From IMG/VR virus record IMGVR_UViG_3300030102_006934, positions 186,001 to 250,000 of that record: a DNA stretch of 64,000 nucleotides, one strand, 5' to 3'. The notes under the pieces were generated by a model. That model saw nothing but the letters and a program-made list of their open reading frames with translations. It searched no databases and was not told the DNA's origin. Position numbers and translations under genes: made by a program. This document shows positions 222 through 50,844 of this stretch, piece by piece; the stretch's first letter is position 1, and each line of letters starts with the position of its first letter.

Positions 222-362
222 AATTTTTGATTTTTTTGGACGGGTTAAATCTTAACCACTCGTATTGTTTGATTTTAATTATAGATAAAATAAGATTCAT
301 AGTAAAGACACATATTTAGAAAGATTAATAAATGTGGTGCATATTTATAAGAAAAAACAATA

Positions 363-1511
363 ATGAGTTTAATTATATCTGATTCTGAAAGAGAAAAATT
401 GTTTAGACAAGTAAAACACCGATTAGGTGCACCAATAAGAAAAATCGAGTTAGAGGATGAAATGTTGGAAACCTTATTAGAGATTTCAATAGAAGATCAT
501 TCGTCTTACATAAATGAGTGGTTAATAGAATCACAGTGGACTTCTTTATATGGTAAAGATTTGACCACAACAGATTTAACCAAAGCTTTAACAGTTAGAG
601 AAATGGCCTATGAAGATTCTTTTACTTATGCCTATTCTAAGATTGTTGGGTTACAGGCTAGAGGTCCTTGGGAACTTAAAAAAGATTATGTCACAGTTAA
701 AGCTGGGCAACAAGTTTATGAAATACCAGCAGGTAGAGAAATAAATGAAGTTTTATGGATTACACCACCTACAATAGATCACGCACTTTATGCTTCATAT
801 GGTTTTGGGGATGCAGGTTTTGGTGGTGGTTTTGGTCAACTACCCTTCGCTGGTGGGGGTGGAGGTTTGGGATATGGAGGATTCTTTTTAGGTTCTTCTT
901 ACGATATTTTAAGTAGAGACGCCGATTATAGTCTAAAACAAAGAATTATTTCTGGTGATTTAATTTATAAAATAACGGCTGGAGCAAATGGTACTAAATT
1001 ACTACATCTAATACCACCCCCAGGTTCAAGAATAATCTTTGGTACAATCGGTGGAGGAAGAAATGGTATTGATGTCACAGGTAGTAAGGTTTGGTACCAT
1101 TATTATGAAACTAAAGATGACGATGACAGAAAAAGATGTCTTAATGATAATAAGGATATAGTTAAATTACCTTCAGACGTTCCTATTGATGTTGTTGACT
1201 TTGATGAATTAAATACACCCTCCAAACAATGGGTTAGAGATTATTTTACGGCTATGTGTAAAGAAACCCTAGGTAGAGTTAGAGGTAAATTTAGTGGTTC
1301 TTTAGGTATAACTGACGCAGATGTTACTATGGATTATGATTCATTATTAAATGAGTCTAAAGAAGATAAAGATAAACTTTGGGAAAGACTGAAAGAAAGA
1401 TTAGAAAGACTAAGACCAGACAAGATGTTAGAAAGAAAGGCTTTAGAGGCAGAAAATTTAAACAAGTCATTACAATTTAGACCGTTGGGTCATCATTGGA
1501 ACGTTATTTAA
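363..1511 (+). CDS. Neck/head-completion protein (T4 gp13-like)
   Basis: N-terminal RLGAPIRKIEL matches the gp13 LGAPxIxVEL motif; C-terminal KETLGRVRGKF; TATTTATA upstream. Confidence 0.8.
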   Translation: MSLIISDSEREKLFRQVKHRLGAPIRKIELEDEMLETLLEISIEDHSSYINEWLIESQWTSLYGKDLTTTDLTKALTVREMAYEDSFTYAYSKIVGLQARGPWELKKDYVTVKAGQQVYEIPAGREINEVLWITPPTIDHALYASYGFGDAGFGGGFGQLPFAGGGGGLGYGGFFLGSSYDILSRDADYSLKQRIISGDLIYKITAGANGTKLLHLIPPPGSRIIFGTIGGGRNGIDVTGSKVWYHYYETKDDDDRKRCLNDNKDIVKLPSDVPIDVVDFDELNTPSKQWVRDYFTAMCKETLGRVRGKFSGSLGITDADVTMDYDSLLNESKEDKDKLWERLKERLERLRPDKMLERKALEAENLNKSLQFRPLGHHWNVI

Positions 1512-1513
1512 TT

Positions 1514-3154
1514 ATGTCAGGAATTTTTAATACAAGACCTAGGTTTCAAGATAGAGATATGAAACAAATGAGTGGTGACACTATGACACTTTCTGGTGAC
1601 ACCATAATCACAGGTAATTTAGCGTATAATAATGGCGCTACTATTGGTTATGTTTTAACAGCTATAGACACTAATGGTAATGTTGGTTGGTCACCATTAT
1701 CATCGGTAACACCAGGTATTTTTTGGACTTCTGGTTCAACTAACTTAAGTAATATAATTGCTGACAATGGTACTGGTACGGATGCTACAGGTCAGTTTGC
1801 GGTCTCTTGGGGTAAGGGTAATTTGTCTAGTGGATTTCTTTCTACCTCCATGGGTCAAGATAATTTAGCTTCTGGACCTACTTCTTTAGCTCAAGGTAGG
1901 GATACTATAGCTTCTGGTTTTTATTCACATTCACAAGGTTCTCTAACTAAGGCTAGTGGTGATAGTTCTCACGCGGAAGGTGATAATACTTTAGCTAGTG
2001 GTGGTAGTTCTCACGCGGAAGGTGATAATACTTTAGCTAGTGGTCAAGCATCACATGCTGAAGGTAATGGTTCAATCGCAGATGGTGAGGCATCACACGC
2101 AGAAGGTAGTGGTTCAACAGCTAGTGGTCCAGGATCACATGCTGAAGGTACATTGACTTTCTCCAAAGGTAGTTATTCTCACGCAGAAGGTATGTCCACA
2201 ACTGCAGCGACCCAATACTCACATTCAGAAGGTTTCACCACTTTAGCTACTGGTGAATCTTCTCATGCGGAAGGGGATGGTACTGTATCATCTGGTCAAG
2301 CATCACACGCTGAAGGTGTGGATACTCAAACCAATTCAAATTATTCCCACTCAGAAGGTGATGGTACTGAAACTAATGGTTTAGGTTCTCACACAGAAGG
2401 ACTTTCTACCGTAACCTATGGTAATTATGCACACGCAGAAGGGAGTGGTACTAGAGCAGGTATAAGTACTACTGTTGGTATAGCTTCACACGCTAGTGGC
2501 CTAGGAACCATAGCTTATGAGGATTATCAAACCGTTATGGGTAGATATAATACGACTGGTAATACAAATCAGTACTTAGTTGTGGGTAGAGGTACTTCTT
2601 CAGCGGCTAGAGCTAACGCTTTTAGGATTGACTCAGCTGGTGAAATATATGGTGCTGGAGCTACTTACAATTCTGGGGCTGATTACGCTGAATATTTTGA
2701 ATCTGTAGATGGTTCTTCCATTCCTTTTGGGACAGTTGTTGAATTAGACAATGGTAAAATTAAAGAATGTGTTGACCCAAATAACGCTATTGGTGTTGTT
2801 TCTTCTAAACCTTCAATCGTTGGTAACTGTGAAGATGGTACTTCTGATGAGTGGGTTGGTAAATATATAAAAGATGTTTGGGGCAATTACATATATGAAG
2901 ATTACGAGTACGATGTTGATGTGTATGTTGGTGAAAACGGAGAAGAGGTATTCGTAACAAAAGAGGGTAAAAGAAGAGTTTTAAATAAAGATTTTAACCC
3001 ATCGACACCTTACCAAACTAGAAAGGAAAGGGATGAGTGGAATGTAGTTGGGTTATTAGGTCAAATAAGAATTTTAAAGAATCAACAAATACCATCTAGG
3101 TGGATAAAAATTAAAGATATTAACAATGATATAGCTATTTATCTTGTTAGATAA
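1514..3154 (+). CDS. Trimeric fibre/adhesin with 14-aa SHAEG beta-roll repeats and C-terminal Peptidase_G2-like intramolecular chaperone
   Basis: About 13 tandem 14-aa SHAEG repeats; GADYAEYFES...EWNVVGLLGQI typical of the G2 autocleaving chaperone. ATG 1514 preferred over TTG 1496. Confidence 0.75.
   Translation: MSGIFNTRPRFQDRDMKQMSGDTMTLSGDTIITGNLAYNNGATIGYVLTAIDTNGNVGWSPLSSVTPGIFWTSGSTNLSNIIADNGTGTDATGQFAVSWGKGNLSSGFLSTSMGQDNLASGPTSLAQGRDTIASGFYSHSQGSLTKASGDSSHAEGDNTLASGGSSHAEGDNTLASGQASHAEGNGSIADGEASHAEGSGSTASGPGSHAEGTLTFSKGSYSHAEGMSTTAATQYSHSEGFTTLATGESSHAEGDGTVSSGQASHAEGVDTQTNSNYSHSEGDGTETNGLGSHTEGLSTVTYGNYAHAEGSGTRAGISTTVGIASHASGLGTIAYEDYQTVMGRYNTTGNTNQYLVVGRGTSSAARANAFRIDSAGEIYGAGATYNSGADYAEYFESVDGSSIPFGTVVELDNGKIKECVDPNNAIGVVSSKPSIVGNCEDGTSDEWVGKYIKDVWGNYIYEDYEYDVDVYVGENGEEVFVTKEGKRRVLNKDFNPSTPYQTRKERDEWNVVGLLGQIRILKNQQIPSRWIKIKDINNDIAIYLVR
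1790..2520 (+). repeat. 42-nt (14-aa) coding tandem repeat, SHAEG
   Basis: Periodic tc(t/a)ca(c/t)gc.gaaggt; near-exact 42-nt duplication at about 1952-2045. Confidence 0.9.
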
Positions 3155-3163
3155 AATAATGAT

Positions 3164-6612: not shown

Positions 6613-6885
6613 TTTTTTTCATATTTTTTAGTCTTTTACTAAAAACCTACCTATTTATATAAAAAGAATGGAGTTAAACCATTCGAATATTAATATCAAA
6701 TATATAATATTTCCAATTTAAATTTATATTAAAATCTAGTGGGTAGTTTTGTTTTAACTTCAGAAATACCCAACATCAAATATTTTTATTAATCAACAAA
6801 ATTAAGATTTGAATAACAAATAAAAATCTATATTAGATTTTTAACACAAAAGAGTGTTTAATAATTTGTTAAAAAAAAAATAATT

Positions 6886-11561: not shown

Positions 11562-11594
11562 TATGGGGGTGTGTAAACACCCCCATATTTATTT
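11562..11594 (+). terminator. Rho-independent terminator after the fibre gene
   Basis: TATGGGGGTGT-GTAA-ACACCCCCATA followed by TTTATTT. Confidence 0.8.
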
Positions 11595-11639
11595 ACCATT
11601 ACTAATTTAATAAATATTTATTGTTAAACACTTATAGAT

Positions 11640-12758
11640 ATGTCTACTCAAAAAGAAAATAAAATGAACCTTTTAATATGGACTAGAACTGGGGAAAGTC
11701 TAAAAATAATAAATGAGTCTTTGGAAAAAGAATTTAAAGAAAAATATAACCTTTTAAATTATACTAAAAGGGGTGATATATTGTTAATGCACCACATTCA
11801 TTTAGACGATTTATCTAAATTCAGTAGAAGAATACTTATTCAACCAATGGACGGAACTGTTATACATCCACATATTATAGAAAAAATTAATAATTTTCAT
11901 TACATAGTTACACCATCTAATATTGGTAAAGAATTATTAGAAAACAATGGAGTTACTAAGCCTATTAAAGTAATACCTAATTATTATGATGATAACTTAT
12001 TGGGTGATGACAATGGTTTCTTTTCTAGTTTATTTAATGAAAAAAAATATACTTTCTATACAGAATCTACTGCTACACATAGAAAGAATATTAATAGGAC
12101 ATTAAGAAATTTTTTAAAAGAATTTACTGAAAAAGATAATGTTAGGTTAGTGATAAAATTAAATGAGGTATCAAAAAGTAGAGTTTCAGTACTTAAAAAA
12201 CTATTAAAAAAATACCCAAATCACCCAGAAGTAATTATTATAAATAAAAAGTTACCTAAAGAATATCTATACTCAATAAAAAAAGGTATAGATTGTTATA
12301 TTTGTTTATCGTATATGGAAGGATTTTGTATTCCATTATTAGATGCTGTAGTGTTAAAAAAAGATATAATTACTTTAGATACTAAAATCAGTGGTTATAG
12401 GGATTTTATAAATAAAGATAACTCTATTTTATTACCAGTGAAAGAGATATCTACGTTTTTATCTCCAGGAGATGAATGGATTTATTCGAAAAATTCCAAA
12501 TGGGAGAACGTTGATTATGTCGAATATAGAAAAGCTTTAAGGACTGCATTTAATGGTGAATATACTTTCAATAAAAATCAAGACTATAGTCAATATAGTC
12601 AAAAAAATGTTATGAGCCAATACAATGAACTACTAGATGTTGTTTCCAATGAAGTACTAGAAAGGGAAATGAAAATTAAAGAATTAGCACAACTTAGATA
12701 TGATGAACATTTTAGTAAGTTTAGAATGAATCCTAATTTAAATAGAAGAATAGATTAA
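11640..12758 (+). CDS. GT-B glycosyltransferase (GT4-like)
   Basis: IVTPS, VIPNY, HRKNI and SYMEGFCIPLLDA (E-x7-D variant of the EX7E motif). Confidence 0.8.
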   Translation: MSTQKENKMNLLIWTRTGESLKIINESLEKEFKEKYNLLNYTKRGDILLMHHIHLDDLSKFSRRILIQPMDGTVIHPHIIEKINNFHYIVTPSNIGKELLENNGVTKPIKVIPNYYDDNLLGDDNGFFSSLFNEKKYTFYTESTATHRKNINRTLRNFLKEFTEKDNVRLVIKLNEVSKSRVSVLKKLLKKYPNHPEVIIINKKLPKEYLYSIKKGIDCYICLSYMEGFCIPLLDAVVLKKDIITLDTKISGYRDFINKDNSILLPVKEISTFLSPGDEWIYSKNSKWENVDYVEYRKALRTAFNGEYTFNKNQDYSQYSQKNVMSQYNELLDVVSNEVLEREMKIKELAQLRYDEHFSKFRMNPNLNRRID

Positions 12759-13573
12759 TTAAACACTCTTTTACCGTACCAAAGTTGGTGGTAGTGTGTA
12801 TTACCTCCATCGTATAATAAACTTTGGTGGTTATCAATTTTAGGTTTTCCTATTATTTCACCATTCCTTTCGTCAAAAATCATTTTTCTACCTATTTCAT
12901 CGAGTCTATAGTCTAAAATTAAAGAATCATTATTTTCTTTTAATCTAATCTCTTTTGGTGTATTACTTTTGTAAGTTTTAAGATTAATAGTAGTACCTTT
13001 AAAAACCCCCATAAACGCCTGACCTAAAGCTACTGGACCAGTTATACCCAAAGTAGAGTGAGTATAATTTTCTTCTTCTATATTTTTTTTAGCTATTTCC
13101 GTTACTCGATATACTACGGGGTCTAATGGTTTTACACACATTAATGCATTATATAAACCTAATTTATCACTCAAACTATCCCTACATAAAACCCTGTCAA
13201 AACCACTACATATATTATTATATGGTACATATATTTCTTGTGTCATATCACCATAACATCCCCCATATTTGTAGAGTAATAAGTACCTAAATAAATCGGC
13301 TTTGTAAGCAGTAGGTATTAATTTATTGTAGTGTAGTAAGTAACTGGGGTTAAAATCTTTAATGAAATTATAACAATCATCGTTATCAAAATAAACAAAA
13401 TCATAATCAGGGTTTAACTTAATGGTATCTTTGTAAACCCCCATAACTACGTTAGGTATATCTTCTATTGCCCACTTACCAGTTCTAAAAATTATTTTAG
13501 GTATCTCGTCAACAAATATATCTACTTTGTCATATTTTTTGATGAACTGTCTATATGTTATTAAACCTGACAT
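12755..13573 (-). CDS. GT32/OCH1-like glycosyltransferase (DxT variant)
   Basis: IPKIIF, AYKADLFRYLLLYKYGGCYGDMT, ITGP. Confidence 0.8.
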   Translation of the reverse strand: MSGLITYRQFIKKYDKVDIFVDEIPKIIFRTGKWAIEDIPNVVMGVYKDTIKLNPDYDFVYFDNDDCYNFIKDFNPSYLLHYNKLIPTAYKADLFRYLLLYKYGGCYGDMTQEIYVPYNNICSGFDRVLCRDSLSDKLGLYNALMCVKPLDPVVYRVTEIAKKNIEEENYTHSTLGITGPVALGQAFMGVFKGTTINLKTYKSNTPKEIRLKENNDSLILDYRLDEIGRKMIFDERNGEIIGKPKIDNHQSLLYDGGNTHYHQLWYGKRVFN

Positions 13574-14751
13574 TCATCGTACAAATTAGTTTTATAATTA
13601 TATACCATTTCACTATTTCCACCTTTCCATAAATTTTCTATTAAAGTATCGTAAGCTTCTATTATGTTTTCATTTTCAGTGTGGTATCTTTGTAACACTA
13701 AATCATTTTTCTCATTGTATGAATCTAAATTTTTATCATGATTCTCTAATATGTACGATAACATTTTAGCTCCCTCTATTGTGTCAGAACCTTCGTAATA
13801 ATAACCTAAGTCAGCACACATATAAGCGTTGTGTAAGACGGGATAACCTAAATAAACGGCATCTAAATAAAGGTAGTTTAATGGGTTTAAAATTTGATGG
13901 CATACTAATATATCTAGGTGTTGTGTTAGAACATACGCTGTCTGATATCTAGCTTCGGCAGATATTTTATCGTCCTTAAAAAGGTCAAAAGTTTTTATAA
14001 ATGACATAAAGAGTTTATCTTCTTTAAGTTTAGTAGCATTTGTTATTCTCAATTTATCTATATAATTCTTACCAACCAGACCACGATAACATTCCTCGAC
14101 TATCATAGTTGGTATTAAACAAAATTTTACGATATTTAAATTGGGTTCCATTATACCTATAATTTTCTTTTCTTTAGTATTATCGTATTGCCAACCTTTT
14201 TTATATATATTTTTTCTAAAACCAGACTCTATTTCAACAGTTTTTTCATGTAGGAATTTTTGGTTCCATAAAAAGGGTACCATTAAAGCATTCGTTCTAT
14301 GTAAAGTTTTATAATAACCGTTATTAACTTCATGTTGTTGCGGTACATACCATAATTCATCTAATTCTTGTTCAAACTCACCAGTATTACTACCTTCACT
14401 AAATAATATTTCTTCCATGGATAAAACATAGTTATTACCACATTTATATGAAACAACCTTTTTGTCACCACTTTCTCTGAATTTTTTTAAATCACTATCC
14501 AACATTTGGCCACCCATAGATATAATTAAATCCATTTCCATAAATTTGTTTTTAACATAAAAAATATCAATATCTTTTAAGTAGTATGGTTTTTTCGTGA
14601 AATCAACGTCAAATATGTTCAATATACATATTTCATATTTTTTTTTGGATCTTTTAAGTAGGTCCACTAACATTAGGACATTCTGTTTGATTCCGTTTGT
14701 CCAAATTGATTCGTCATTAGTTTTTAATCCTAAAGTTATACCTATTTTCAT
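13561..14751 (-). CDS. DUF2827-family protein (putative GT-B fold)
   Basis: MKIGIT..SIWTNGIKQN, GIMEPNLNIVK, HQILNPLNYLYLD, GYPVLHN, LGYYY. Confidence 0.75.
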   Translation of the reverse strand: MKIGITLGLKTNDESIWTNGIKQNVLMLVDLLKRSKKKYEICILNIFDVDFTKKPYYLKDIDIFYVKNKFMEMDLIISMGGQMLDSDLKKFRESGDKKVVSYKCGNNYVLSMEEILFSEGSNTGEFEQELDELWYVPQQHEVNNGYYKTLHRTNALMVPFLWNQKFLHEKTVEIESGFRKNIYKKGWQYDNTKEKKIIGIMEPNLNIVKFCLIPTMIVEECYRGLVGKNYIDKLRITNATKLKEDKLFMSFIKTFDLFKDDKISAEARYQTAYVLTQHLDILVCHQILNPLNYLYLDAVYLGYPVLHNAYMCADLGYYYEGSDTIEGAKMLSYILENHDKNLDSYNEKNDLVLQRYHTENENIIEAYDTLIENLWKGGNSEMVYNYKTNLYDECQV

Positions 14752-14774
14752 TTTTTAAATATTATTTTATTTGG

Positions 14775-15326
14775 TTATCTATTATTATTGCAAAATCTTA
14801 TAAATCTATCTACTATTTCTTTTTTCTCCCCCTCTGTTTTTGAATTTATCCAAATCCATATAAAAGATTCTTCTATCTTCTTAATTTCAGACTTTTTAAT
14901 TTCTATAAGTTTGTTGAACAAATCTAGTTCTAAATCAGATACCTCGACATCGATATCCAATTTTTCACAAATGATATATAACTCCAAAACATCATTTAAA
15001 TTATTAGCTCTCGTAGCTTCTAAATAATAATTATTTAATACCCCTGAATTTACTTTATCGGGGTGAGTTTGTTTAACAATTTCTCTATATATTTTTTTTA
15101 TTTTACTTTTGGTTTGGTTTGGTATATTTTCGTTTTTTATTTTAACCTCTTCTTTCTTAATAGGACCATTCTCCTGATTATCTTTTTTTTCCTTAGTGAA
15201 AGTTTCCTTTAGGAATTCTTCTCGATACTCATCTACCATATTATTCTTTAATTCATAATCGGTATTTAACAAGTTATACTCTTGTATTATTCTTTGTATT
15301 TGTAATTTTTTTATTTTATAGTTCAC
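14775..15326 (-). CDS. J-domain (DnaJ-like) protein
   Basis: IKKIYREIVKQTHPDK contains the HPD motif; GTG start. Confidence 0.7.
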   Translation of the reverse strand: MNYKIKKLQIQRIIQEYNLLNTDYELKNNMVDEYREEFLKETFTKEKKDNQENGPIKKEEVKIKNENIPNQTKSKIKKIYREIVKQTHPDKVNSGVLNNYYLEATRANNLNDVLELYIICEKLDIDVEVSDLELDLFNKLIEIKKSEIKKIEESFIWIWINSKTEGEKKEIVDRFIRFCNNNR

Positions 15327-15401
15327 GTCTATAAATATTTTAATAAAACTGAATATTCATTTTTTTTTAGATATTTATAGTATATATAAAAACAAATTAA
15401 A

Positions 15402-16034
15402 ATGGTAGAATTTAAATACGCTTGTCCCATAGGTAATTATTGTTTTTCAGCGGCTTTACTTAACATGATAAAGTCTAGGGAGATGGCCCTCCCCTTTGAT
15501 TGGTTATTTACTACACCAAAATTTACTACAGAAATATTAAAAAATGACTTCCAAGATTTTTTAGATCCTAAATATTATACAGATATAGCATTAAACGAAC
15601 CAGATAATGAAAGACAAGCGGGTCACACTTTGTATCATGAAAACTTTTTTAACCACAAAGATCCAAGACAAAAATTAGACTATGATTACTATGTTAGATG
15701 TGTTGATAGGTTTAGGGAATTCATAAAATTAAAGGGTAAAAAGTTATTTATATGTTCTTACAAAAATTTAGAAAGTAAGATGGATGATTCGGTAATGTCT
15801 GAGATTTTCGAATTAAACAAAACATTATCAGATATAACTCAAGATCACCACCTTTTATGTCATATTAATTACCCAAATAATGAAGATTTAAAACATGAAA
15901 TAACAAAAATGGGTAATATTACTTTTTTTGAATTGTACACAAAAGAGAATAATCATGGTTTAGGGTACGCTAACAATGAAGATAACGAATGCTTTTTTGA
16001 AGTATTTAATAGTTTGTTTAAACATAAAAAATGA
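15402..16034 (+). CDS. DUF1796-like (putative papain-like) protein
   Basis: CPIGNYC...ALPFDW...FNH...YYVRCVDRF. Confidence 0.65.
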   Translation: MVEFKYACPIGNYCFSAALLNMIKSREMALPFDWLFTTPKFTTEILKNDFQDFLDPKYYTDIALNEPDNERQAGHTLYHENFFNHKDPRQKLDYDYYVRCVDRFREFIKLKGKKLFICSYKNLESKMDDSVMSEIFELNKTLSDITQDHHLLCHINYPNNEDLKHEITKMGNITFFELYTKENNHGLGYANNEDNECFFEVFNSLFKHKK

Positions 16035-16762
16035 TACCAAAAATAATATATAAAACTGGTCCTTTTGAAAAATCAAATTTACCCAATGAAATAGAAACTA
16101 TTTTCAATAAAACCATAAAAGACAATCCAGAATGTGAATTAGTTTATTTTGATGACGTACAGTGTTTGGAATTTATTACAAAAAATTTTAATAGTAGAAT
16201 TTTAAAAACTTATAATTCATTAGTACCTACAGCTTACAAAGCAGATTTATTTAGATATTGTGTGCTTTACCAAAAAGGTGGGATTTGGAGTGACTTAACT
16301 CAGACATTTATTGAACCTATAAATAGTTTTATAGACTTTGAAAAAGATGATTTTATACTAGTTGAGGGTGGTTACATTCCTTGTGCTGAAAAAAGGGGGG
16401 TTGAGATAGCTTTTATGGCCTCTAAACCTAAAAATGAAATTTATTTAAAAGCAATAGAACAAATAATAAAAAACGTAGAATCTAATTATTATGGGTGTAG
16501 TTCATTTAACCCAACGGGACCCATTATGTTTAGGGAATTAATAGAGTCTGGTGGTGTCACTTATAAATTAGGTTTTAAATTTGAGAGACTTGATGATAAC
16601 TCTAGTAACAATGACTTTATTTGTTACGAAAATAGGTTTAACGGTGATAAGAAAATAATCATAAAAACTAGAACTATTAACCATAGTAAATATCTATATT
16701 ACGAAGCAAATAAACCACACTACTCTGAATTACATAGAGATAAAAAAATATACAAAAAATGA
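16031..16762 (+). CDS. GT32-like glycosyltransferase (DxT variant)
   Basis: MIPKIIY, AYKADLFRYCVLYQKGGIWSDLT, TGP; paralogue of 12755-13573. Confidence 0.8.
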   Translation: MIPKIIYKTGPFEKSNLPNEIETIFNKTIKDNPECELVYFDDVQCLEFITKNFNSRILKTYNSLVPTAYKADLFRYCVLYQKGGIWSDLTQTFIEPINSFIDFEKDDFILVEGGYIPCAEKRGVEIAFMASKPKNEIYLKAIEQIIKNVESNYYGCSSFNPTGPIMFRELIESGGVTYKLGFKFERLDDNSSNNDFICYENRFNGDKKIIIKTRTINHSKYLYYEANKPHYSELHRDKKIYKK

Positions 16763-17502: not shown

Positions 17503-17506
17503 AAAA

Positions 17507-18412: not shown

Positions 18413-18427
18413 CACTTAATAAAAAAA

Positions 18428-19126: not shown

Positions 19127-19136
19127 ATAAAAAAAA

Positions 19137-19568
19137 ATGAGAAAAGTAGTTATAGTTAGTGGGTACTTTAACCCAATTCATAAAGGACATTTAGAACTTT
19201 TAAGAAAGGCAAAAGAATTTAGTGATGATTATGTCATAGCCATAGTTAATTCAGACTTACAGAGAGAACTTAAGGGTTCAAAAGAATTCCAAGAAGAGAA
19301 CGAAAGACTAGAAATAGTTAGTTCAATAAAATACGTTGGCCACGCTTTAATTTCTATTGATAAAGATAGAACACAAATAGAAACTTTAAAACATATTCAC
19401 AATGAATATGGTAAGGTATGGGAACTTTATTTCGCGAATGGTGGGGACCAAGATAATAATTCAATACCAGAAAGCTCAATTTGTGGTGAACTAGGGATAA
19501 ATCTTTTAGATGGCCTTGGTGATAAAATACAATCTAGTAGTTGGTTACTAAAAAATAAAAACAAATAA
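19137..19568 (+). CDS. Cytidylyltransferase-family nucleotidyltransferase (RfaE/TagD-like)
   Basis: SGYFNPIHKGH (HxGH), FANGGD, KIQSSS. Confidence 0.85.
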   Translation: MRKVVIVSGYFNPIHKGHLELLRKAKEFSDDYVIAIVNSDLQRELKGSKEFQEENERLEIVSSIKYVGHALISIDKDRTQIETLKHIHNEYGKVWELYFANGGDQDNNSIPESSICGELGINLLDGLGDKIQSSSWLLKNKNK

Positions 19569-20298: not shown

Positions 20299-20335
20299 GT
20301 TTATTAATCACATTAATATTTATAATAAAAAGGTT

Positions 20336-20719: not shown

Positions 20720-20750
20720 TATTTGAAACATATTTATATAAAAACAATAA

Positions 20751-22970: not shown

Positions 22971-23047
22971 AACTTATTAAATATACAAACATTTTTAATA
23001 AAATAAATGAAATGGTATTTAATAGATATTTATATAAAAAAACATTT

Positions 23048-25266: not shown

Positions 25267-25331
25267 ATTTTTTGAGTTTTTATCTAATATTTATTATTAG
25301 AAAATAACATAAAAAGAAAAAACATTTTTCA

Positions 25332-28195: not shown

Positions 28196-28222
28196 AACAT
28201 ATTTATATTAAAAAAGAATATT

Positions 28223-29911: not shown

Positions 29912-29951
29912 TTTTTTCTTTAGTGTTTAATTACAAATATAATAATTATTT

Positions 29952-30320: not shown

Positions 30321-30424
30321 AATGTTTTTTACAAATATAAAAAATTATCACAAAAAAACCTAATAATAGTGATTTTTTTTTATTAAAAGCGGTGATATTT
30401 ATATAATAAATATAAATATTTTAC

Positions 30425-34848: not shown

Positions 34849-34948
34849 GTCTTTTGAAATTTATTGTTTTTTATAACTATAGTTTAATTATTATAATAAG
34901 TCAAATTAATTTTTTATAAAAAACCTAATATTTATATAAAAAAGATTT

Positions 34949-37321: not shown

Positions 37322-37377
37322 AACAAAATTGTCGCATATTTATAATAAAAGATAATAAAAAAGTAAAAACATAAACA

Positions 37378-38879: not shown

Positions 38880-39719
38880 TTAATTTTCGTCACCACCCTC
38901 CTCTAAAATAGTAGAGTAGTTAGGTTTATTTGTTAATAATTCACTTTTGGAACCTTCATAAAAGTTTTCACCGAGAATACTATGAAGTTTAATACCTAGA
39001 TTAAAAGCGTTTTGTACTTCTTCAACAACAACATATTCATCATCTGTATGATATCTATGGTAACCAGCCGCTAAATTAAGACAAGCGAAGTTGAATTTTT
39101 CCATTAAAGGCCAAATGTCCGTATATGGATGTCTTTCCCAACTAGTAACACCATGTTCTAATATTGGTTCGGAAACTTTTTCAGCGAAATCACTATTTTC
39201 AGAGAATAACCTTTTACCCATTAAAGTTAAACTCATTGAATTACCTTTGGGTGAATCATATTGAATAGCGTAACCCACATCTTTAAAAAAGTTAGGGTCT
39301 GCTTGATTTGAACCTATACAACCTATTTCTTCGGAAACAAAAAAGGCGACTTTAACATTATCTAATTTGTCTAACATCTCCAAACAAAGGTAAACACCAC
39401 ATTTATCATCCCCACCAATTCCTGAAGGTCTCATTGTTGTAGAATCAATACCAGTTAATATGGTCTTACCTTCTTCTTCTAGTTGAATGACTTTAAGATT
39501 TTTATTCACTCTATGAACTGTATCTGTGTGCGACACAAAACAAGGAAAATTATCAGTTTTACCTTTAGTAACATATATATTACCTATTTCATCTATATGA
39601 TGTTTGTAATTCTTTTGTGTTAGAACTTCTTTCAGATAATCTATCATCAATCCTTCATCTCTAGAGAATGTAGGTACCGATAATACTTCTTTCAATCTGT
39701 TTAAATTAGGGTCTTTCAT
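38880..39719 (-). CDS. M28/M20/M42-clan metallopeptidase
   Basis: SHTDTVH, GGDDKCG, SEEIG, YHTDDE. Confidence 0.85.
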   Translation of the reverse strand: MKDPNLNRLKEVLSVPTFSRDEGLMIDYLKEVLTQKNYKHHIDEIGNIYVTKGKTDNFPCFVSHTDTVHRVNKNLKVIQLEEEGKTILTGIDSTTMRPSGIGGDDKCGVYLCLEMLDKLDNVKVAFFVSEEIGCIGSNQADPNFFKDVGYAIQYDSPKGNSMSLTLMGKRLFSENSDFAEKVSEPILEHGVTSWERHPYTDIWPLMEKFNFACLNLAAGYHRYHTDDEYVVVEEVQNAFNLGIKLHSILGENFYEGSKSELLTNKPNYSTILEEGGDEN

Positions 39720-39742: not shown

Positions 39743-39774
39743 CAAATATAAAGACTTTTTTCCTATTAAACAAA
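39743..39774 (-). promoter_or_regulatory. Bacteroidota sigma-A type promoter
   Basis: TTTG (39774-71)-N20-TATATTTG (39750-43), an exact match to the -33/-7 consensus. Confidence 0.75.
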
Positions 39775-39941
39775 TTTTTTGTGATTTTTTTTGCTAGCGA
39801 AAGCTTTTCTTTGAGCTTATATGTATATTATATTAAGTAAAAGCATATTAATAATAATGATCTAAAAGCTGCTTAAAAAAATAAAAACAAAATATTTATG
39901 AATGTAAATAGTATAATAAAAGTTTTATAAAAAAAATATTA

Positions 39942-40934: not shown

Positions 40935-40965
40935 CTTTCTCGTATATTTATAATAAAAAGAAAGT

Positions 40966-45449: not shown

Positions 45450-45482
45450 CATAAAGAATATTTATTAAAAAAGTTAGACAAT

Positions 45483-48400
45483 ATGCCTTCTATAAATCCC
45501 GAAAATTACAACATAAACAGTTTCAATAGTCAAACATTAGGACCAATTACAGTCCAAGACTTTAGGGATTATGTGTTAAAACACAACCTCCCTGGTTTAG
45601 ACCCAGTTTTAGCTAGTAACGGAATAGATAATTACGGCTTAAATATTTACGCACCTTTATTATTTAACCCATCAGATACGGTGAACGATTTACCTAATTT
45701 ATCTGAAGTAGCTTTTATACCTAGCCCAATAAACGATAATACCTCACCTAGACCAGACAATAAAAAAAGAAATTTATTCACCAACGAAGAACCTTTCATT
45801 GGTTCTGAAACAGAGGAAGAGATTTTTTCTGTAACAACAAGGTCTCTGGAAGATCCAGGTTCTATAGATTCTTGGGTAGAGGGAGCTGGTTTTTCAACAG
45901 ATGTATTTTCGGTTAGAAATTTTAACAACTTAACTAACAATGAGTACGGACCAGAATACGTAGAAACTTATAATGACCCTGACCAACCATTAGAATCTAC
46001 AGGTTATAAACAATATCCATCAGACGCTGGTGGAGATGTAATAGGACCAGTAATAGCTAGAAGTTTAGGTTTTAGTCCTGAGAATTTTATTAATTTCCCA
46101 TCACCACTACAAGATACAGCTAAGGAAAGAAGAATTGAAGAATTAACAAATAGAGTTAAATTAAACTTTGTTGATGATACTGTTGGTAGATTAAATTTAG
46201 ACCCTTTAGGTTTATTAGCTGGACAAAGCATTTTTCTACCAGATTATACAATAACTAAAAGAAAAGGTATACTTGGTAAAGCGGCTCAATTCGCAGCTAG
46301 TTTAGGTGGTTTCAATTGGCCTAGAAGTCCACTAAAAGGTGGCAAAAATCCTGACTTAGGGAGTAACGCTTTCCAAGCAGACTTATTAGACTTCACTGGT
46401 AAAGCACAAAGGAAAATTTTATATAAAAATGTTTACTCTAGTAAGTACACACCAGAATTACTAACAAAAGGTTATGATTTAGAAAATGCGGGAGCCGATA
46501 CTTTAAGTGCTGGTGGAGCCGAATCTTTAGGTGAGGGAAAGAAAACACCTAACAACTATTTAAAATTAAATAAAAAATTAAATAAAGACGAATCTACTAG
46601 AGAACGTAGAGTAGGTAATTGGTTAAGGGATTTAACAACTAAAGGAGATCAAACATTACAACCAGATAGTGATAGACTAACCACACCATCGGACCCATTT
46701 GTAACCATGGGTGTAACAGGACAATATCCATCAATAGATAATCTTGATCCCGAATCTACATTTGTTGAATTAGATTTTATAACACCACCATCTTATCAAT
46801 ATGGGGATGAAAACTACTACCCAAACAAAACCACATTAAAACCATCACAAGAGGATAGTGATAGTGGTCTAAATAGTTTTACTCACACAACACCTGGTAC
46901 AAAAAACTTATTCTATTGGCAGAATAGGGACAGAAGTGTCGCTAAAAGAGGTTTATTAGATTTTACTCAAAAAATGATTAATAATACAGACGCGAATGGA
47001 TATAGAGGTGGAGCTAAATTTATTGGTCGTTTTGATAGTGATAGTAATCTAAAGGATGTACAAGTTGATGTGGGTGATGGAGATGTAAGAAACGTACCTA
47101 GGTCGAAAGATGTCTCCAAAGGTAACTTACTTCGAGGAGCAGATGGTGACCATTATTGTCGTTCATGGACAACTAGAAATCCATACCAAAACCATTATGA
47201 TTTAATTAGAAGAAGTAGGTTATACAGAGCGGGTGGTGGTTCGGATACAGGACCATTCCCAGGGCCATACCAAAGTACATTAGAAGATAATGGACATGTT
47301 AAGATAGCACCTTATTCGTCAGATGACTTTGATATTGATGCCGATGTAACAAATGCTAGAGGAATATTTAACTCTGGTAATGATGTTAAAAGATATATGT
47401 TCTCCATAGAAAATTTAGCTTGGGCTGATGCAACAGAAAAAATAGCATTAGAAACTTGTGAAATAGGCCCAAATGGTGGTAGAATAATGTGGTTCCCACC
47501 TTATGATATTAACTTTACAGATAATACAACGGCTAATTGGGACTCAACCGTATTCTTGGGTAGAGCTGAACCAGTCTACACATATAATCATACAGAAAGA
47601 AAAGGTACTTTAAGTTGGTCTATAATTACAGATCACCCATCCGTTTTAAATAAACTAAAAAGTCCATTAGAGGGTAAAATATTAGAATTTTTTGCTGGAT
47701 GTGGTGTAGATGTTACTAAATTTTATGAAGAAATAAAAGAAGAAATTTTAAGGATAGAAATACCAGTAATCGAAGATGAGGATGAAGATGATGATGAAGA
47801 TGAAGTTATTACACCAACTCCAGTAATAAAAAAAGAACCACCCGTTAAAAAGTTAAGTTTTTATTTTAGGAATGCTGGACCAGGAGATGGTAGTGCTAAA
47901 GGTAGACCTGGTGTGGGTAGAACTATCGAGAAAGAAATTGCCGTAAATTATGATACGGGTAAATTTAGTAGTGATGGTGTTGGAAAGAATCAAATATCTA
48001 AAACTAAAACAGGTGATTATTTAATGTTGAATGAAAATCGTTGGTTTACAACGGAAGGTGATGAGAGTAAGGGTATAGATGCTTTAATAGACTTTTTAGC
48101 AACAGAAGACGGTCAAGAATGGTCTATTAAATTAGAGGGTTTCTGTAGTGCCGCTTCAACCGACACATATAATCAAATGTTATCCATAGATAGGGTACAA
48201 CGTGTTTATGAGTATATGGCTAAAGCCGTAAAAGAAAGAGGTGAAACTGGTGGTTCTGGTTATACATATATACCTGAAAACTTTAAAAAGGCACATTTTG
48301 GTTATAAGTGTACTGATGGTACCGATGATAAAAGAACTTCTTATCGAAAACAAAAAGATGCTGAACTAGGTATGGATTCTAGGAAATGTGCAGAATGTTT

Positions 48401-50789
48401 TTCGGTTGGTAGAAAATACGGTTACTACCCTTACGTGGGGTCAATCAAAGATATTGGTACGCCTAAATCTGAAAATATAACTGAGGAAGAACTATCTAAA
48501 TTAGGGAGATGGATTACAGTTGCTAAAAGTGAGGATTACGCGGCCCAAGTTGATGAAGATGGGTTGCCTTTGGAAAGTGAACAATTAGACGGTACAGTAA
48601 TATCCGTGGGTACTCTATCTAATAAAGCTAAAGAAGATAGAAAAGTAGTGGTAACTTTATTTAGAAACCATGAGTATGTTGCACAAAATACAAAAGTTGA
48701 AGATGACCCATCTTTATCTTCTGAATTAGAATTAACTAGATTACCAATTCAACCCTTACCAGAAAGAATAGGACCAGAACCACCAGGAACACCCAAAACC
48801 ATCTTGATACCAGACGCGATAGATTTTCCTTCCGATTCCATCACCTTCTCACCAAACGGTGACTTGTTACAAGATGGATTACCAGTCATGGAATACCGTG
48901 AAGAACCTAAAAAAACTAGAAAACAAAGAAGGTTAGAAAAAAAGAAAAATAAAAACCAAGAGTACGAAAAAGAAGTTGTTACTTCGGCTGGTACAAAAAC
49001 TATAATGACAAAATACGGTGAAATAATAGAACTACCAACTACTGAAGCTTTATTGAAACAAAAAGCTGTAGAAGACCAGATTCGAACAACTGAAGAGATA
49101 GCTAGAAGAGCGGCAGATGGTGGTGTCTCTGAAAACGTAAACGATGATGAAATTAGTGAAAACCCTATTATCACTGAAAAAGTTGTTAAGAGAGTAGTTC
49201 AAAAATTATTTAGGGAGTGTGAATACTTTGAAAAAATAAAAGTATCAGATCCTTTTTTATATGAAACTATAGAAGAAAAAGTTAAATTTTTTCATCCAGC
49301 TTTTCATTCTATCACACCAGAGGGGTTAAATAGTAGGTTAACTTTCTTACAACAATGTATGAGACAAGGGCCAAGTTTAAGAGACTCAAACAATATTACA
49401 CAAAACATGGCTTTTGGTAAACCACCCGTTTTAGTACTAAGAATAGGTGATTTTTATTACACTAAAATAATACCAGATTCATTAAACATAAATTACGAAC
49501 CACTACAATGGGATATGAACCCTGAAGGTGTTGGTGTACAACCTATGATTGCCAAAGTAGATTTAAACTTTAGTATGGTGGGGGGCTCTAGTTTAGACGG
49601 ACCAATAAATAGATTACAAAACGCAGTATCTTTTAACTTTTTCGCCAATACTTCTGTTTATAACCCTAGAAGATATTATGATGGTAATATAGCTAATAGA
49701 AGTGCTTTCAGTACGATGGAAGAAAAACTAGAGGAAGATGCTAATAAAATAGAGTTGAATAATCAAAATATAGGATTTGGGGCTTTCAAAACACAAGACC
49801 AAGCCTCCTTAGAATTCTATGGTAAAGATACGGGTGGTCAACAAAGTAATGTTAAAACAGACGATAAAGATAAAGGTGATAAAAATGAAGATGAAGAAAT
49901 TAAAGCAACATTCTATTTTAATGATTTAGGGATATCACCTAAAGGAGCTTCAATACCAGAAGAACAAAAAATAAAAACTAATATTTTAATAGACCCTAAT
50001 CAACCAAATAAACCAATAGATGAAGCGTTATTAATGGGTACCACTGGTGAGGTTGAAGTTGAGGGTGTAGACCCAACAACTAGTGTTTTTTACGCTGGTG
50101 GATTTATGGGGACTGAATCTGACCAAGAAGAAATATCTAATATGTATCCAGGTTCAACCACACCACTAATAGAGTTAAGGTCAGATTTGTTTTATAGAGT
50201 TCAGTACAAAGAAGTGGTGGAACTACCATTGGGTGAAGAAGTTTTAACAGGTAATATAAACCCACAAGTTAATATTAATGAATCCAATATAAAAGCAAAA
50301 TACCCAGATGGGTCTGGTGGTATTTTATTAGATACAATAACATTCGGTATAACTAACGAGGGTAGAAAACAAGGTTGGTATGTATCCCCAAGAGTTGAGC
50401 TTAAAATGACTTATCCAGATGGTGAAGTTAAAACTCTACAAGATAAGGCTTATATTGTATCCACCACATCATCAATCGAAAGTTTAGGTAAACCATATAC
50501 TGATAATACGGTTATCACTACAGACGTAGCAATGGTATTAACTTTTGAAGTTCAAAGATACTACTTAGATTGGTTTGATTTAGATGGTTTTGAAAATGGT
50601 AATTACAAATTAGACATTACTTGGATATATGCTAGAGAAGTTACAGAAGAAACACAAGGAATAGACCCTACTAAAAACGTTGGTGACTTAGTGATTAAGG
50701 AGTATACAGAAAGTTTAGTATATGACTTGTATAGTGAAGATTATGTTGACACAACCCTAATAGGACCACAACCAAACCCAACACCTTAA
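45483..50789 (+). CDS. Baseplate/tube-initiator-like protein with inserted OmpA-like peptidoglycan-binding domain
   Basis: Tube-like halves FPPYDINFTD..ANWDS..LGRAEPVYTY and KPPVLVLRIGD..SLNINYE flank IKLEGFCS...YNQMLSIDR...DRKV. Confidence 0.6.
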   Translation: MPSINPENYNINSFNSQTLGPITVQDFRDYVLKHNLPGLDPVLASNGIDNYGLNIYAPLLFNPSDTVNDLPNLSEVAFIPSPINDNTSPRPDNKKRNLFTNEEPFIGSETEEEIFSVTTRSLEDPGSIDSWVEGAGFSTDVFSVRNFNNLTNNEYGPEYVETYNDPDQPLESTGYKQYPSDAGGDVIGPVIARSLGFSPENFINFPSPLQDTAKERRIEELTNRVKLNFVDDTVGRLNLDPLGLLAGQSIFLPDYTITKRKGILGKAAQFAASLGGFNWPRSPLKGGKNPDLGSNAFQADLLDFTGKAQRKILYKNVYSSKYTPELLTKGYDLENAGADTLSAGGAESLGEGKKTPNNYLKLNKKLNKDESTRERRVGNWLRDLTTKGDQTLQPDSDRLTTPSDPFVTMGVTGQYPSIDNLDPESTFVELDFITPPSYQYGDENYYPNKTTLKPSQEDSDSGLNSFTHTTPGTKNLFYWQNRDRSVAKRGLLDFTQKMINNTDANGYRGGAKFIGRFDSDSNLKDVQVDVGDGDVRNVPRSKDVSKGNLLRGADGDHYCRSWTTRNPYQNHYDLIRRSRLYRAGGGSDTGPFPGPYQSTLEDNGHVKIAPYSSDDFDIDADVTNARGIFNSGNDVKRYMFSIENLAWADATEKIALETCEIGPNGGRIMWFPPYDINFTDNTTANWDSTVFLGRAEPVYTYNHTERKGTLSWSIITDHPSVLNKLKSPLEGKILEFFAGCGVDVTKFYEEIKEEILRIEIPVIEDEDEDDDEDEVITPTPVIKKEPPVKKLSFYFRNAGPGDGSAKGRPGVGRTIEKEIAVNYDTGKFSSDGVGKNQISKTKTGDYLMLNENRWFTTEGDESKGIDALIDFLATEDGQEWSIKLEGFCSAASTDTYNQMLSIDRVQRVYEYMAKAVKERGETGGSGYTYIPENFKKAHFGYKCTDGTDDKRTSYRKQKDAELGMDSRKCAECFSVGRKYGYYPYVGSIKDIGTPKSENITEEELSKLGRWITVAKSEDYAAQVDEDGLPLESEQLDGTVISVGTLSNKAKEDRKVVVTLFRNHEYVAQNTKVEDDPSLSSELELTRLPIQPLPERIGPEPPGTPKTILIPDAIDFPSDSITFSPNGDLLQDGLPVMEYREEPKKTRKQRRLEKKKNKNQEYEKEVVTSAGTKTIMTKYGEIIELPTTEALLKQKAVEDQIRTTEEIARRAADGGVSENVNDDEISENPIITEKVVKRVVQKLFRECEYFEKIKVSDPFLYETIEEKVKFFHPAFHSITPEGLNSRLTFLQQCMRQGPSLRDSNNITQNMAFGKPPVLVLRIGDFYYTKIIPDSLNINYEPLQWDMNPEGVGVQPMIAKVDLNFSMVGGSSLDGPINRLQNAVSFNFFANTSVYNPRRYYDGNIANRSAFSTMEEKLEEDANKIELNNQNIGFGAFKTQDQASLEFYGKDTGGQQSNVKTDDKDKGDKNEDEEIKATFYFNDLGISPKGASIPEEQKIKTNILIDPNQPNKPIDEALLMGTTGEVEVEGVDPTTSVFYAGGFMGTESDQEEISNMYPGSTTPLIELRSDLFYRVQYKEVVELPLGEEVLTGNINPQVNINESNIKAKYPDGSGGILLDTITFGITNEGRKQGWYVSPRVELKMTYPDGEVKTLQDKAYIVSTTSSIESLGKPYTDNTVITTDVAMVLTFEVQRYYLDWFDLDGFENGNYKLDITWIYAREVTEETQGIDPTKNVGDLVIKEYTESLVYDLYSEDYVDTTLIGPQPNPTP

Positions 50790-50844
50790 ATAGTTTGTAA
50801 AAAAAGTTTACATTTGAGATATTTATCTAATAATTAAGTAAGAT

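What the first reader, a model, noticed from the sequence alone, without database searches (positions are those of the whole stretch)
342..50826. Late promoter TATTTAT(A) is the reverse complement of the T4 late box TATAAATA
Seen: 18 sites on the sense strand upstream of structural, cargo and glycosylation genes, with no obvious general upstream element. At this AT content a 7-mer falls in a 40-nt window only about 2% of the time. Known: T4 gp55 reads TATAAATA on the non-template strand. Inference: a distinct phage late sigma factor or activator recognises a box resembling the host -7 element (TATATTTG). The motif also corrects starts (23048) and assigns the GT locus to the late class.
Basis: partly seen in the sequence, partly recalled or inferred. 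Interest (0 to 1): 0.6.

Follow-up and report, generated by a model that had tools for sequence, protein, structure and literature searches.

The report
Conserved phage late-type promoter box ATATTTAT
A short DNA box (ATATTTAT) sits a fixed few bases in front of about a fifth of the genes of this 380-kb marine giant phage, mostly genes for building the virus particle. It is conserved in hundreds of relatives and is most likely a phage-specific promoter read by a previously unannotated, very divergent relative of the T4 late sigma factor gp55.

Summary
The window is bases 186,001-250,000 of a 380,343-bp IMG/VR jumbo myovirus with T4-like portal, capsid and sheath. TATTTAT is not over-represented in the window as a whole (61 vs 54.5). 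It is strongly enriched, strand-specific and position-locked upstream of genes. The true core is ATATTTAT: 83 of 451 genes genome-wide vs 9.4 in shuffles, and 14 of 46 window genes vs 1.1.

Spacing to the ATG is bimodal (4-5 nt and 13-16 nt) with a sharp floor at 4 nt, as expected of a -10-type element that fixes a transcription start. The box is kept exactly upstream of the portal gene in 62 of 69 relatives while the flanks diverge. It also occurs before structural genes of cultured Flavobacterium phage immuto and Microcystis phage Mel-JY01.

Packaging, virion and lysis genes carry it. Nucleotide-metabolism and repair genes carry the Bacteroidota host box (TTTG-N18-20-TAnnTTTG).

A 257-aa ORF outside the window (genome 166,667-167,440, minus strand) is a remote gp55/sigma-region-2 homologue. 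It co-occurs with the box in all three lineages; two of them lack any canonical sigma-70 gene.

No transcription start or timing data exist. "Late" and the sigma assignment are inferences. The reverse-complement relation to the T4 box is true but probably coincidental.

The parts
341..348 (+). L box ATATTTAT, 14 nt before the ATG at 363 (382-aa protein with head-tail adaptor-like C-terminus)
3135..3142 (+). Variant box CTATTTAT, 21 nt before the ATG at 3164 (881-aa protein)
   Evidence: The C variant is common in phage immuto.
6350..6357 (+). Variant box CTATTTAT, 21 nt before the ATG at 6379 (77-aa ORF)
6651..6658 (+). Variant box CTATTTATA. Only a 17-codon ORF follows; the 1539-aa gene starts at 6886.
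   Evidence: Function here is uncertain.
11614..11621 (+). L box 18 nt before the ATG at 11640 (glycosyltransferase). A second copy at 11585-11592 directly follows a GC-rich hairpin.
15331..15338 (-). L box on the minus strand, 4 nt before the GTG at 15326 (91 nt before the ATG at 15239). It heads the minus-strand operon: DnaJ-like, DUF2827, glycosyltransferase.
15371..15378 (+). L box 23 nt before the ATG at 15402. It heads the plus-strand operon with three DXD glycosyltransferases and a cytidylyltransferase (15402-19568).
20316..20323 (+). L box 12 nt before the ATG at 20336
20730..20737 (+). L box 13 nt before the ATG at 20751
23026..23033 (+). L box 14 nt before the ATG at 23048. It lies inside the longer ORF call from 23012, which supports 23048 as the start.
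25287..25294 (+). L box 37 nt before the ATG at 25332 (tail sheath, 938 aa)
   Evidence: No contig from the four RNA libraries that fits the window throughout reaches upstream of 25324.
28199..28206 (+). L box 16 nt before the ATG at 28223, directly after a terminator-like hairpin downstream of the sheath gene
30395..30402 (+). L box 22 nt before the ATG at 30425
34928..34935 (+). L box 13 nt before the ATG at 34949 (790 aa)
37336..37343 (+). L box 34 nt before the ATG at 37378
39892..39899 (+). L box 42 nt before the ATG at 39942
40944..40951 (+). L box 14 nt before the ATG at 40966 (535 aa, followed by a tape-measure-like 951-aa gene), directly after a terminator-like hairpin
45458..45465 (+). 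L box 17 nt before the ATG at 45483 (1768 aa)
50819..50826 (+). L box 18 nt before the ATG at 50845 (107 aa, then the 4098-aa ORF). A host-type box TACATTTG at 50809-50816 sits 2 nt upstream, forming a tandem arrangement.
39743..39750 (-). For contrast: host-type Bacteroidota box TATATTTG with TTTG 19 nt upstream, 23 nt before the minus-strand gene starting at 39719
30332..30339 (-). For contrast: host-type box TATATTTG, 11 nt before the minus-strand gene starting at 30320
29934..29941 (-). For contrast: host-type box TATATTTG, 22 nt before the minus-strand gene starting at 29911

Best explanation
ATATTTAT (extended form: T-tract at about -28..-26, then a non-T base, then ATATTTAT, then W) is the -10-region element of a phage-specific promoter class.

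Host core RNA polymerase is redirected to it by a phage-encoded, highly divergent gp55-like sigma factor. This is the 257-aa product of genome positions 166,667-167,440 on the minus strand, 18.6 kb upstream of the window.

Transcription starts about 5-6 nt downstream of the box. That gives either leaderless mRNAs (box, 4-5 nt, ATG) or 5' leaders of about 9-11 nt, followed by the A-rich, Shine-Dalgarno-free initiation region typical of Bacteroidota.

The class drives virion, packaging, lysis and glycosyltransferase genes. Genes with the host-type TTTG-N18-20-TAnnTTTG promoter are read by the host primary sigma (or the phage's own primary-type sigmas) before that.

Status of each step:
- Shown: enrichment, strand and position specificity, conservation, association with gene function, and co-occurrence with the ORF family.
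- Inferred: that it is a promoter, where the start site lies, the timing, and which protein reads it.
For: 1. Enrichment. ATATTTAT is the top 8-mer upstream of genes: 83 of 451, 14.7-fold over expectation, 18 antisense. Shuffles give 9.4 +/- 2.9.

2. Geometry. In 331 unique sites (own genome plus relatives), spacing to the ATG is bimodal at 4-5 nt (60 sites) and 13-16 nt (110 sites), with almost nothing below 4. There is an A-rich patch 5-7 nt after the box, where a start site would lie. Host-type boxes show the same 4-nt floor.

3. Transcription-unit position. 19 of 85 boxes lie within 70 nt downstream of a terminator-like hairpin, against 20 of 307 for genes without a box (p = 1e-4). In several cases the interval from hairpin to ATG holds nothing but the box.

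4. Phylogenetic footprint. The exact box is kept before the portal gene in 62 of 69 relatives (58-97% protein identity) while the flanks diverge. It is the top 8-mer upstream of ORFs around the portal in all relatives (212 of 613 unique upstream regions), where TAnnTTTG occurs at most twice per locus.

5. Function.
- Box-headed genes: T4-like portal, large terminase, tail sheath, adaptor-like protein, amidase, glycosyltransferase operons, and the gene in front of the Gp23 capsid gene.
- Host-box-headed genes: class I RNR, DnaG primase, UvdE, Mom, SprT, metallophosphatase, CCA/polyA polymerase, DUF2828 (two copies), and the genes in front of both primary-type sigma genes.
- Sources. Fisher p = 0.002.

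6. The candidate sigma (the 257-aa ORF).
- Weak Sigma70_r2 hit in the same ORF. A relative's copy reaches 20.6 bits.
- phrog_234, 'late sigma transcription factor' (the T4 gp55 family), is the only annotated family hit: 11 of 22 homologues, best E = 1.6e-5.
- Profile-profile alignment to a gp55 alignment covers gp55 residues 47-125, E = 1.7e-4, probability 49%.
- The N-terminal domain of the model superposes on sigma domain 2 structures, including T4 gp55 chain 7d7d_F (Z 6.3, 114 of 137 residues).
- ESM Atlas neighbours are viral 'RNA polymerase sigma factor family' clusters (score 0.98).

7. Co-occurrence. Flavobacterium phage immuto and Microcystis phage Mel-JY01 both have [A/C]TATTTAT before terminase, portal, tail and lysis genes. 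Both have a full-length homologue of this ORF. Neither has a PF04542 sigma-70 gene.

8. Like T4 late promoters, the box lacks a -35/-33 element.
Against: - There is no transcription start or time-course data. The metatranscriptome material is assembled contigs only. It shows that the sheath region is present in RNA libraries but gives no 5' ends.
- Homology of the ORF to gp55 is remote. The hhalign probability is only 49%. No PDB sequence hit was found. Foldseek found nothing significant, and the VIA Z-scores are in the range common for helical proteins.
- No gp45-type clamp was found. gp33 was not searched.
- The box also precedes two DnaB-like helicase genes and the operon with a class II RNR. 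It is the nearest upstream box for 288 of 451 genes, or 76% of coding capacity. That is more than a strictly late class would be expected to cover.
- The function-class table is small and was assembled after the fact. Structural proteins of this phage rarely match any family.
Confidence: 0.6

Rival explanations
1. The box is a promoter, but it is read by one of the phage's two primary-type sigma-70 factors (genes at genome 59,574-60,407 and 291,143-291,958; regions 1.2, 2 and 4 present) rather than by the gp55-like ORF.
For: - Both genes are intact and lie just downstream of host-type promoters, which fits an early-to-late cascade.
- The second sigma belongs to a large clade of 271-aa proteins that are probably phage-borne.
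- The box shares A(-11) and the TTT of the Bacteroidota -7 element, which a Bacteroidota-derived region 2 could read.
Against: - Phages immuto and Mel-JY01 use the same box but have no PF04542 gene.
- A 96%-complete 318-kb relative has only one such gene.
- Box promoters lack the -33 TTTG that region 4 of these sigmas should need.
- Regions 2.3-2.4 of both phage sigmas look like ordinary Bacteroidota RpoD.
Confidence: 0.15
2. The box is a variant host promoter used by the host primary sigma together with a phage activator or sigma-appropriation factor, as in T4 middle promoters (MotA/AsiA).
For: - The box overlaps the host -7 consensus at A(-11) and TTT.
- The portal gene and the gene at window 50845 have a host-type box immediately upstream of the L box.
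- A weak T-tract lies at a fixed distance upstream.
Against: - T at the host's -12 position is avoided (12% vs 34.5%, p = 4e-21).
- The invariant host G is replaced by A.
- The same box is used in a cyanobacterial host whose sigma recognises a different -10.
- No conserved activator-type upstream box is seen genome-wide.
Confidence: 0.12
3. The box acts at the RNA level, as a translational operator or processing site in the 5' leader (RegA- or RegB-like), and not as a promoter.
For: It lies very close to start codons (4-20 nt) and is AU-rich, as are RegA operators.
Against: - The floor at 4 nt and the peak at 4-5 nt leave no room for a leader that contains the box.
- The box often follows terminators, with no other promoter-like sequence in between.
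- Its composition is -10-like.
- It is kept in hosts with very different translation-initiation signals: Shine-Dalgarno-like GGAG follows it in Mel-JY01, and A-rich leaders follow it here.
Confidence: 0.05

Closest known systems
T4 late promoters (TATAAATA) read by gp55 with gp33 and the gp45 clamp
   Same: - A single 8-bp A/T box in the -13..-6 region, with no -35 element.
- It heads virion, packaging and lysis genes.
- The phage has a T4-like portal, Gp23 capsid and sheath.
- A remote gp55-like ORF is present.
- Host-type promoter units are over-represented on the opposite strand: 18 of 47 vs 11 of 85.
   Different: - The sequence is ATATTTAT, the base-by-base complement of the T4 box. With a trailing A it contains the reverse complement.
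- The putative sigma is 257 aa, with an extra C-terminal half, against 185 aa for gp55.
- No gp45 homologue was found.
- Many transcripts are predicted to be leaderless.
- Timing and dependence on replication are unknown.
Bacteroidota primary-sigma promoters (-33 TTTG / -7 TAnnTTTG)
   Same: A at -11 and TTT at -8..-6. The distance to the predicted start is similar. The genome also holds about 50 canonical copies of the host type, with TTTG 18-20 nt upstream.
   Different: No -33 element. G is replaced by A-T. The first T is avoided. The two middle bases are fixed as TA. The box is also used in a cyanobacterial host.
Late promoters of T4-like cyanophages (gp55-dependent variants of the T4 box; from my own knowledge)
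   Same: A phage-encoded gp55 and a short -10-type box upstream of structural genes.
   Different: Those boxes are variants of TATAAATA and their gp55 is readily recognisable. Here both the box and the sigma are far diverged.
Microcystis phage Ma-LMM01 (PMC5780444), reported to have no gp55 and no phage-specific late motif
   Same: A distant myovirus of Microcystis for which the control of late genes is an open question.
   Different: It is a different lineage. Its structural region (47% GC) shows no TATTTAT boxes, and the ORF family was not found in the 50 kb I examined. This finding therefore does not transfer to it.

Membership tests
T4-type late transcription system (gp55-dependent late promoter) | A single conserved box in the -10 region on the non-template strand, with no -35 element | tested here: met
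   Position weight matrices of 106 and 331 sites show only the 8-mer, a weak T-tract and non-T at -2. TTTG spacing is flat.
T4-type late transcription system (gp55-dependent late promoter) | Box consensus TATAAATA | tested here: not met
   The consensus is ATATTTAT(A/T). The opposite orientation, ATAAATAT, occurs upstream of only 18 of 451 genes.
T4-type late transcription system (gp55-dependent late promoter) | A phage-encoded gp55 homologue | tested here: inconclusive
   - phrog_234 hits 11 of 22 family members, best E = 1.6e-5.
- E = 3.4e-4 in the genome scan.
- hhalign against a gp55 alignment: E = 1.7e-4, probability 49%.
- VIA Z = 6.3 to T4 gp55 chain 7d7d_F.
- Atlas neighbours are named sigma factor.
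- No PDB sequence hit.
T4-type late transcription system (gp55-dependent late promoter) | gp45 sliding clamp acting as mobile enhancer, and gp33 as co-activator | tested here: not met
   phrog_223 (gp45) gives no hit in the genome at E <= 1. gp33 was not searched. A divergent clamp is not excluded.
T4-type late transcription system (gp55-dependent late promoter) | Late timing and dependence on DNA replication | not testable with these tools
   Only assembled metatranscriptome contigs were available.
Bacteroidota primary-sigma promoter | -7 element TAnnTTTG | tested here: not met
   A replaces G in all sites by definition. T at the first position is depleted to 12%.
Bacteroidota primary-sigma promoter | -33 element TTTG, 17-23 nt upstream | tested here: not met
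   TTTG spacing peaks at 18-20 nt for TAnnTTTG sites but is flat for ATATTTAT sites.

The most novel reading that the evidence does not exclude
An unannotated family of gp55-like sigma factors has more than 1,300 members in public metagenomes. All are labelled hypothetical, including gp118 of cultured Flavobacterium phage immuto and a Mel-JY01 ORF.

Together with the box ATATTTAT, this family forms the late-transcription system of a widespread aquatic lineage of T4-related phages. The lineage spans Bacteroidota and cyanobacterial hosts.

The specificity is the base-complement of T4's, and a large share of late mRNAs are made leaderless.
Probability: 0.45. Interest if true: 0.7.

Novelty: new variant of a known kind. 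Interest (0 to 1): 0.55.

Why it matters
- It would give the first promoter consensus and regulatory logic for a very abundant but mostly uncultured clade of marine jumbo phages. That allows transcription units, gene starts and temporal classes to be annotated from sequence alone.
- It assigns a function to a conserved 'hypothetical' protein family.
- It extends the known range of gp55-type sigma specificity.
- Two cultured systems make it directly testable: phage immuto on Flavobacterium sp. LMO8, and Mel-JY01 on Microcystis.
- The predicted leaderless late mRNAs bear on how translation starts in Bacteroidota, which lack Shine-Dalgarno pairing.

Tried and rejected
- **Whole-window count.** The TATTTAT count is not above chance. 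Only the positional test is.
- **Close cultured relative.** None by megablast.
- **Phage multisubunit RNA polymerase.** PF00562 and PF00623 give nothing, so a phiKZ/AR9-type polymerase is unlikely, unless it is too diverged to detect.
- **TTCACATT.** This block is conserved upstream of the portal box in relatives, but it is not a genome-wide partner element.
- **Third promoter class.** A search among the 307 genes without either box gave only A-rich initiation-region words.
- **gp55-like ORF against the PDB by sequence.** Both the single sequence and the profile gave nothing.
- **Foldseek.** No significant hit.
- **tblastn of the ORF against cultured phages.** Nothing, although profile searches then found immuto gp118 and the Mel-JY01 homologue.
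- **Ma-LMM01.** This is the phage with a published transcriptome (PMC5780444). It proved to be a different lineage without the box, so its data cannot be used here.
- **Metatranscriptomes.** Four marine or aquatic RNA runs hold parts of the sheath region, but as contigs only. They give no 5' ends. Two contigs cross the sheath/next-gene intergenic region.
- **Complex prediction.** No result exists either way.
- **Literature.** Full-text searches for the motif or for late promoters of Bacteroidota phages found nothing relevant.

Full report
**What the window is.**
The window is bases 186,001-250,000 of a 380,343-bp linear IMG/VR virus record. CheckV rates it complete, and its G+C content is 31%. 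It is a jumbo myovirus with T4-type morphogenesis genes:
- tail sheath, adaptor-like and tape-measure-like proteins in the window;
- Gp20-type portal, large terminase and Gp23-type capsid elsewhere in the genome.

No close cultured relative exists. The nearest isolates by portal protein, at about 39% identity, are Microcystis phage Mel-JY01 and Flavobacterium phage immuto. Marine metatranscriptomes and metagenomes hold fragments of the window.

**Checking the observation.**
The 7-mer TATTTAT occurs 61 times in the window. That is not more than dinucleotide-preserving shuffles give (54.5 +/- 7.2). The signal lies in where and on which strand the copies sit.

Forty of the 61 are on the plus strand. 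One more lies on the minus strand in front of the divergent glycosyltransferase operon.

Fifteen of the 19 are preceded by A. Genome-wide, ATATTTAT is the most enriched 8-mer in the 60 nt upstream of genes: 83 of 451 genes, 14.7-fold over expectation, and only 18 in the opposite orientation.

Shuffling each upstream region gives 9.4 +/- 2.9 (maximum 17 of 300) for the genome. For the window it gives 1.1 (maximum 5 of 500) against 14 observed.

- the core is the 8-mer;
- a weak T-tract at -17..-15 and avoidance of T at -2 do exist.

**Why it looks like a promoter.**
I pooled 331 distinct sites from this genome and from portal neighbourhoods of relatives. The distance from the box to the ATG is bimodal. 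There are 60 sites at 4-5 nt and 110 at 13-16 nt, and almost none below 4.

An A-rich patch lies 5-7 nt after the box. In the 4-5 nt class, the A of the ATG falls exactly there. This is the geometry of a -10-type element that fixes a start site. It predicts leaderless mRNAs for the short class and leaders of about 10 nt for the other.

The genome's second motif class shows the same 4-nt floor. This is the canonical Bacteroidota promoter, TTTG-N18-20-TAnnTTTG, in front of about 50 genes.

Boxes often open transcription units. Nineteen of 85 lie within 70 nt of an upstream terminator-like hairpin, against 20 of 307 for genes without any box. In several cases nothing but the box lies between hairpin and ATG.

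**Conservation.**
A scan of IMG/VR with the portal protein returned 291 relatives. In 62 of 69 loci where the portal start could be read (58-97% protein identity), the exact 8-mer lies 14-37 nt (three of them 66 nt) before the ATG. The surrounding intergenic sequence has diverged.

Around the portal in all relatives, the box is by far the commonest 8-mer upstream of ORFs (212 of 613 unique upstream regions). TAnnTTTG occurs at most twice per locus there.

The box also precedes structural genes in two cultured phages:
- **Flavobacterium phage immuto:** terminase, portal, tail-fibre, virion-protein and lysis-cassette genes. It occurs before 10 of 29 genes in the structural part, against 9 of 87 in the replication and nucleotide part.
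- **Microcystis phage Mel-JY01:** terminase, portal, sheath-operon and tail-tube genes, 9 of 36 in all.

Mel-JY01 infects a cyanobacterium. The box is therefore a trait of the phage lineage and not an imitation of the Bacteroidota -7 element.

**Gene classes.**
Genes directly headed by the box:
- portal, large terminase, sheath, adaptor-like protein, a peptidoglycan amidase;
- the glycosyltransferase operons of the window;
- the gene in front of the capsid gene.

Genes headed by the host-type box:
- class I ribonucleotide reductase, DnaG-type primase, UvdE, Mom;
- SprT, a metallophosphatase, a CCA/polyA polymerase, two DUF2828 proteins;
- the genes just upstream of both primary-type sigma genes.

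On these small, post-hoc numbers the association is significant (p = 0.002).

There are exceptions. Two DnaB-like helicase genes and the operon with a class II reductase follow the box. DNA polymerase B, an SNF2 helicase and a ClpB-like gene have neither box.

Counting operons, the box is the nearest upstream signal for 288 of 451 genes. 'Late' may therefore mean 'everything after the host-type early genes'.

Host-type units are over-represented on the minus strand: 18 of 47, against 11 of 85 for the box. This recalls the opposed early and late transcription of T4.

**Who reads it.**
The genome has no recognisable multisubunit polymerase. It encodes two primary-type sigma-70 proteins of Bacteroidota RpoD size, with regions 1.2, 2 and 4. 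They are 51% identical to each other, and one is 60-69% identical to many 'primary sigma factor' proteins.

A third candidate is a 257-aa ORF at 166,667-167,440 on the minus strand. Five independent lines point to a sigma-like protein:
- **Sigma-70 model.** It gave a weak Sigma70_r2 hit. A relative's copy reaches 20.6 bits.
- **gp55 family model.** It hit phrog_234, the T4 gp55 'late sigma' family. That is the only annotated family matched, by 11 of 22 homologues, best E = 1.6e-5.
- **Profile comparison.** A profile-profile comparison with a seven-member gp55 alignment aligns the sigma-2-like core, gp55 residues 47-125 (E = 1.7e-4, probability 49%).
- **Structure.** In an AlphaFold model (pLDDT 73), residues 15-163 superpose on sigma domain 2 structures, including T4 gp55 chain 7d7d_F (Z 6.3, 114 of 137 residues). 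Z-scores of this size are common for helical proteins.
- **Language-model neighbours.** The nearest ESM Atlas clusters are viral 'RNA polymerase sigma factor family' clusters.

The family has over 1,300 members, all unnamed.

Co-occurrence decides between the candidates. Immuto gp118 is a full-length homologue (hhalign 98%), and Mel-JY01 also has one (E = 1.9e-9). Neither phage has any PF04542 sigma-70 gene. The absence of a -33 element at box promoters also fits a gp55-type factor better than a sigma with region 4.

**Relation to T4.**
ATATTTAT is the base-by-base complement of TATAAATA.

A -10 element is read on the non-template strand in one orientation. The box's spacing ties it to the downstream gene. 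A T4-type box on the other strand would point away from the genes. I therefore treat the relation as a coincidence among A/T-only octamers, not as a mechanism.

**What is missing.**
No 5' ends and no timing data are available. The four RNA runs are stored as contigs. They cover the sheath gene and the next gene. None that fits the window throughout reaches upstream of 25324 (the box is at 25287-25294). Two contigs cross the next intergenic region.

The published Ma-LMM01 transcriptome cannot be borrowed, because that phage lacks the box. Literature searches found no description of this motif.

**Verdict.**
This is a real, conserved, phage-specific promoter-like box. It is most likely a late (or middle-plus-late) promoter read by a divergent gp55-like sigma. 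It is a new variant of a known kind of system. Interest is moderate to good, because the lineage is abundant, the sigma family is unannotated, and two cultured systems allow a direct test.

Noticed in passing
genome 147,380-147,424 (outside the window); relatives L030-L106 upstream of the portal gene: The portal promoter region keeps two further blocks in more than 60 relatives. One is TTCACATT, about 35-40 nt upstream of the L box. The other is a TAnnTTT(A/G) block in between, which in this genome is a true host-type TATATTTG. This may be a tandem early/late promoter or a regulator site. TTCACATT is not a genome-wide element.
   Followed up: partly
window 50809-50826: A host-type box TACATTTG lies 2 nt upstream of an L box, with TTTG upstream of it. 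The pair sits in front of the 107-aa gene and the 4098-aa ORF. It is a second case of tandem boxes.
   Followed up: no
genome-wide, e.g. genes starting at 70,470; 316,710; 325,075(-); 123,538(-); 116,580(-); 95,011(-): Several host-type TAnnTTTG boxes lie exactly 4 nt before the ATG. This predicts leaderless early mRNAs as well.
   Followed up: partly
genome 59,574-60,407 and 291,143-291,958 (outside the window): There are two primary-type sigma-70 genes of Bacteroidota RpoD size (277 and 271 aa, 51% identical to each other). Each lies downstream of a gene with a host-type promoter. Their role is open.
   Followed up: partly
window 51155-63451: A single 4098-aa ORF follows a 1768-aa ORF (45483-50789).
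   Followed up: no
window 21147-22970(-), 29645-30320(-), 38880-39719(-): Minus-strand islands sit inside the plus-strand structural block. They hold an SNF2 helicase (no box) and small genes with canonical host-type promoters. This fits early genes set in opposite orientation to late ones.
   Followed up: partly
window 11640-19568: This is a divergent glycosylation locus. It holds at least five glycosyltransferases (four of the DXD type), a cytidylyltransferase, DUF2827 and a DUF1796 papain-like domain protein. L boxes face both ways at 15331-15338(-) and 15371-15378(+).
   Followed up: partly
genome 75,494-76,948 and 308,515-309,933; 134,359-136,824(-); 311,505-312,266: Two DUF2828/DUF7788 (vWA-like) paralogues and a Mom-family protein all have host-type promoters. 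A ClpB-like AAA+ chaperone has neither box.
   Followed up: no
genome about 318,000-321,000 and about 98,000-100,000: Upstream regions there contain tRNA-like sequence (T-arm motifs), which suggests tRNA gene clusters. I did not scan them.
   Followed up: no
NC_055915.1 78,174-78,872 (immuto gp118); PP395634.1 158,863-159,474 (Mel-JY01): Both ORFs belong to the gp55-like family described here. The immuto ORF is annotated as a hypothetical protein; I did not read the annotation of the Mel-JY01 ORF.
   Followed up: yes
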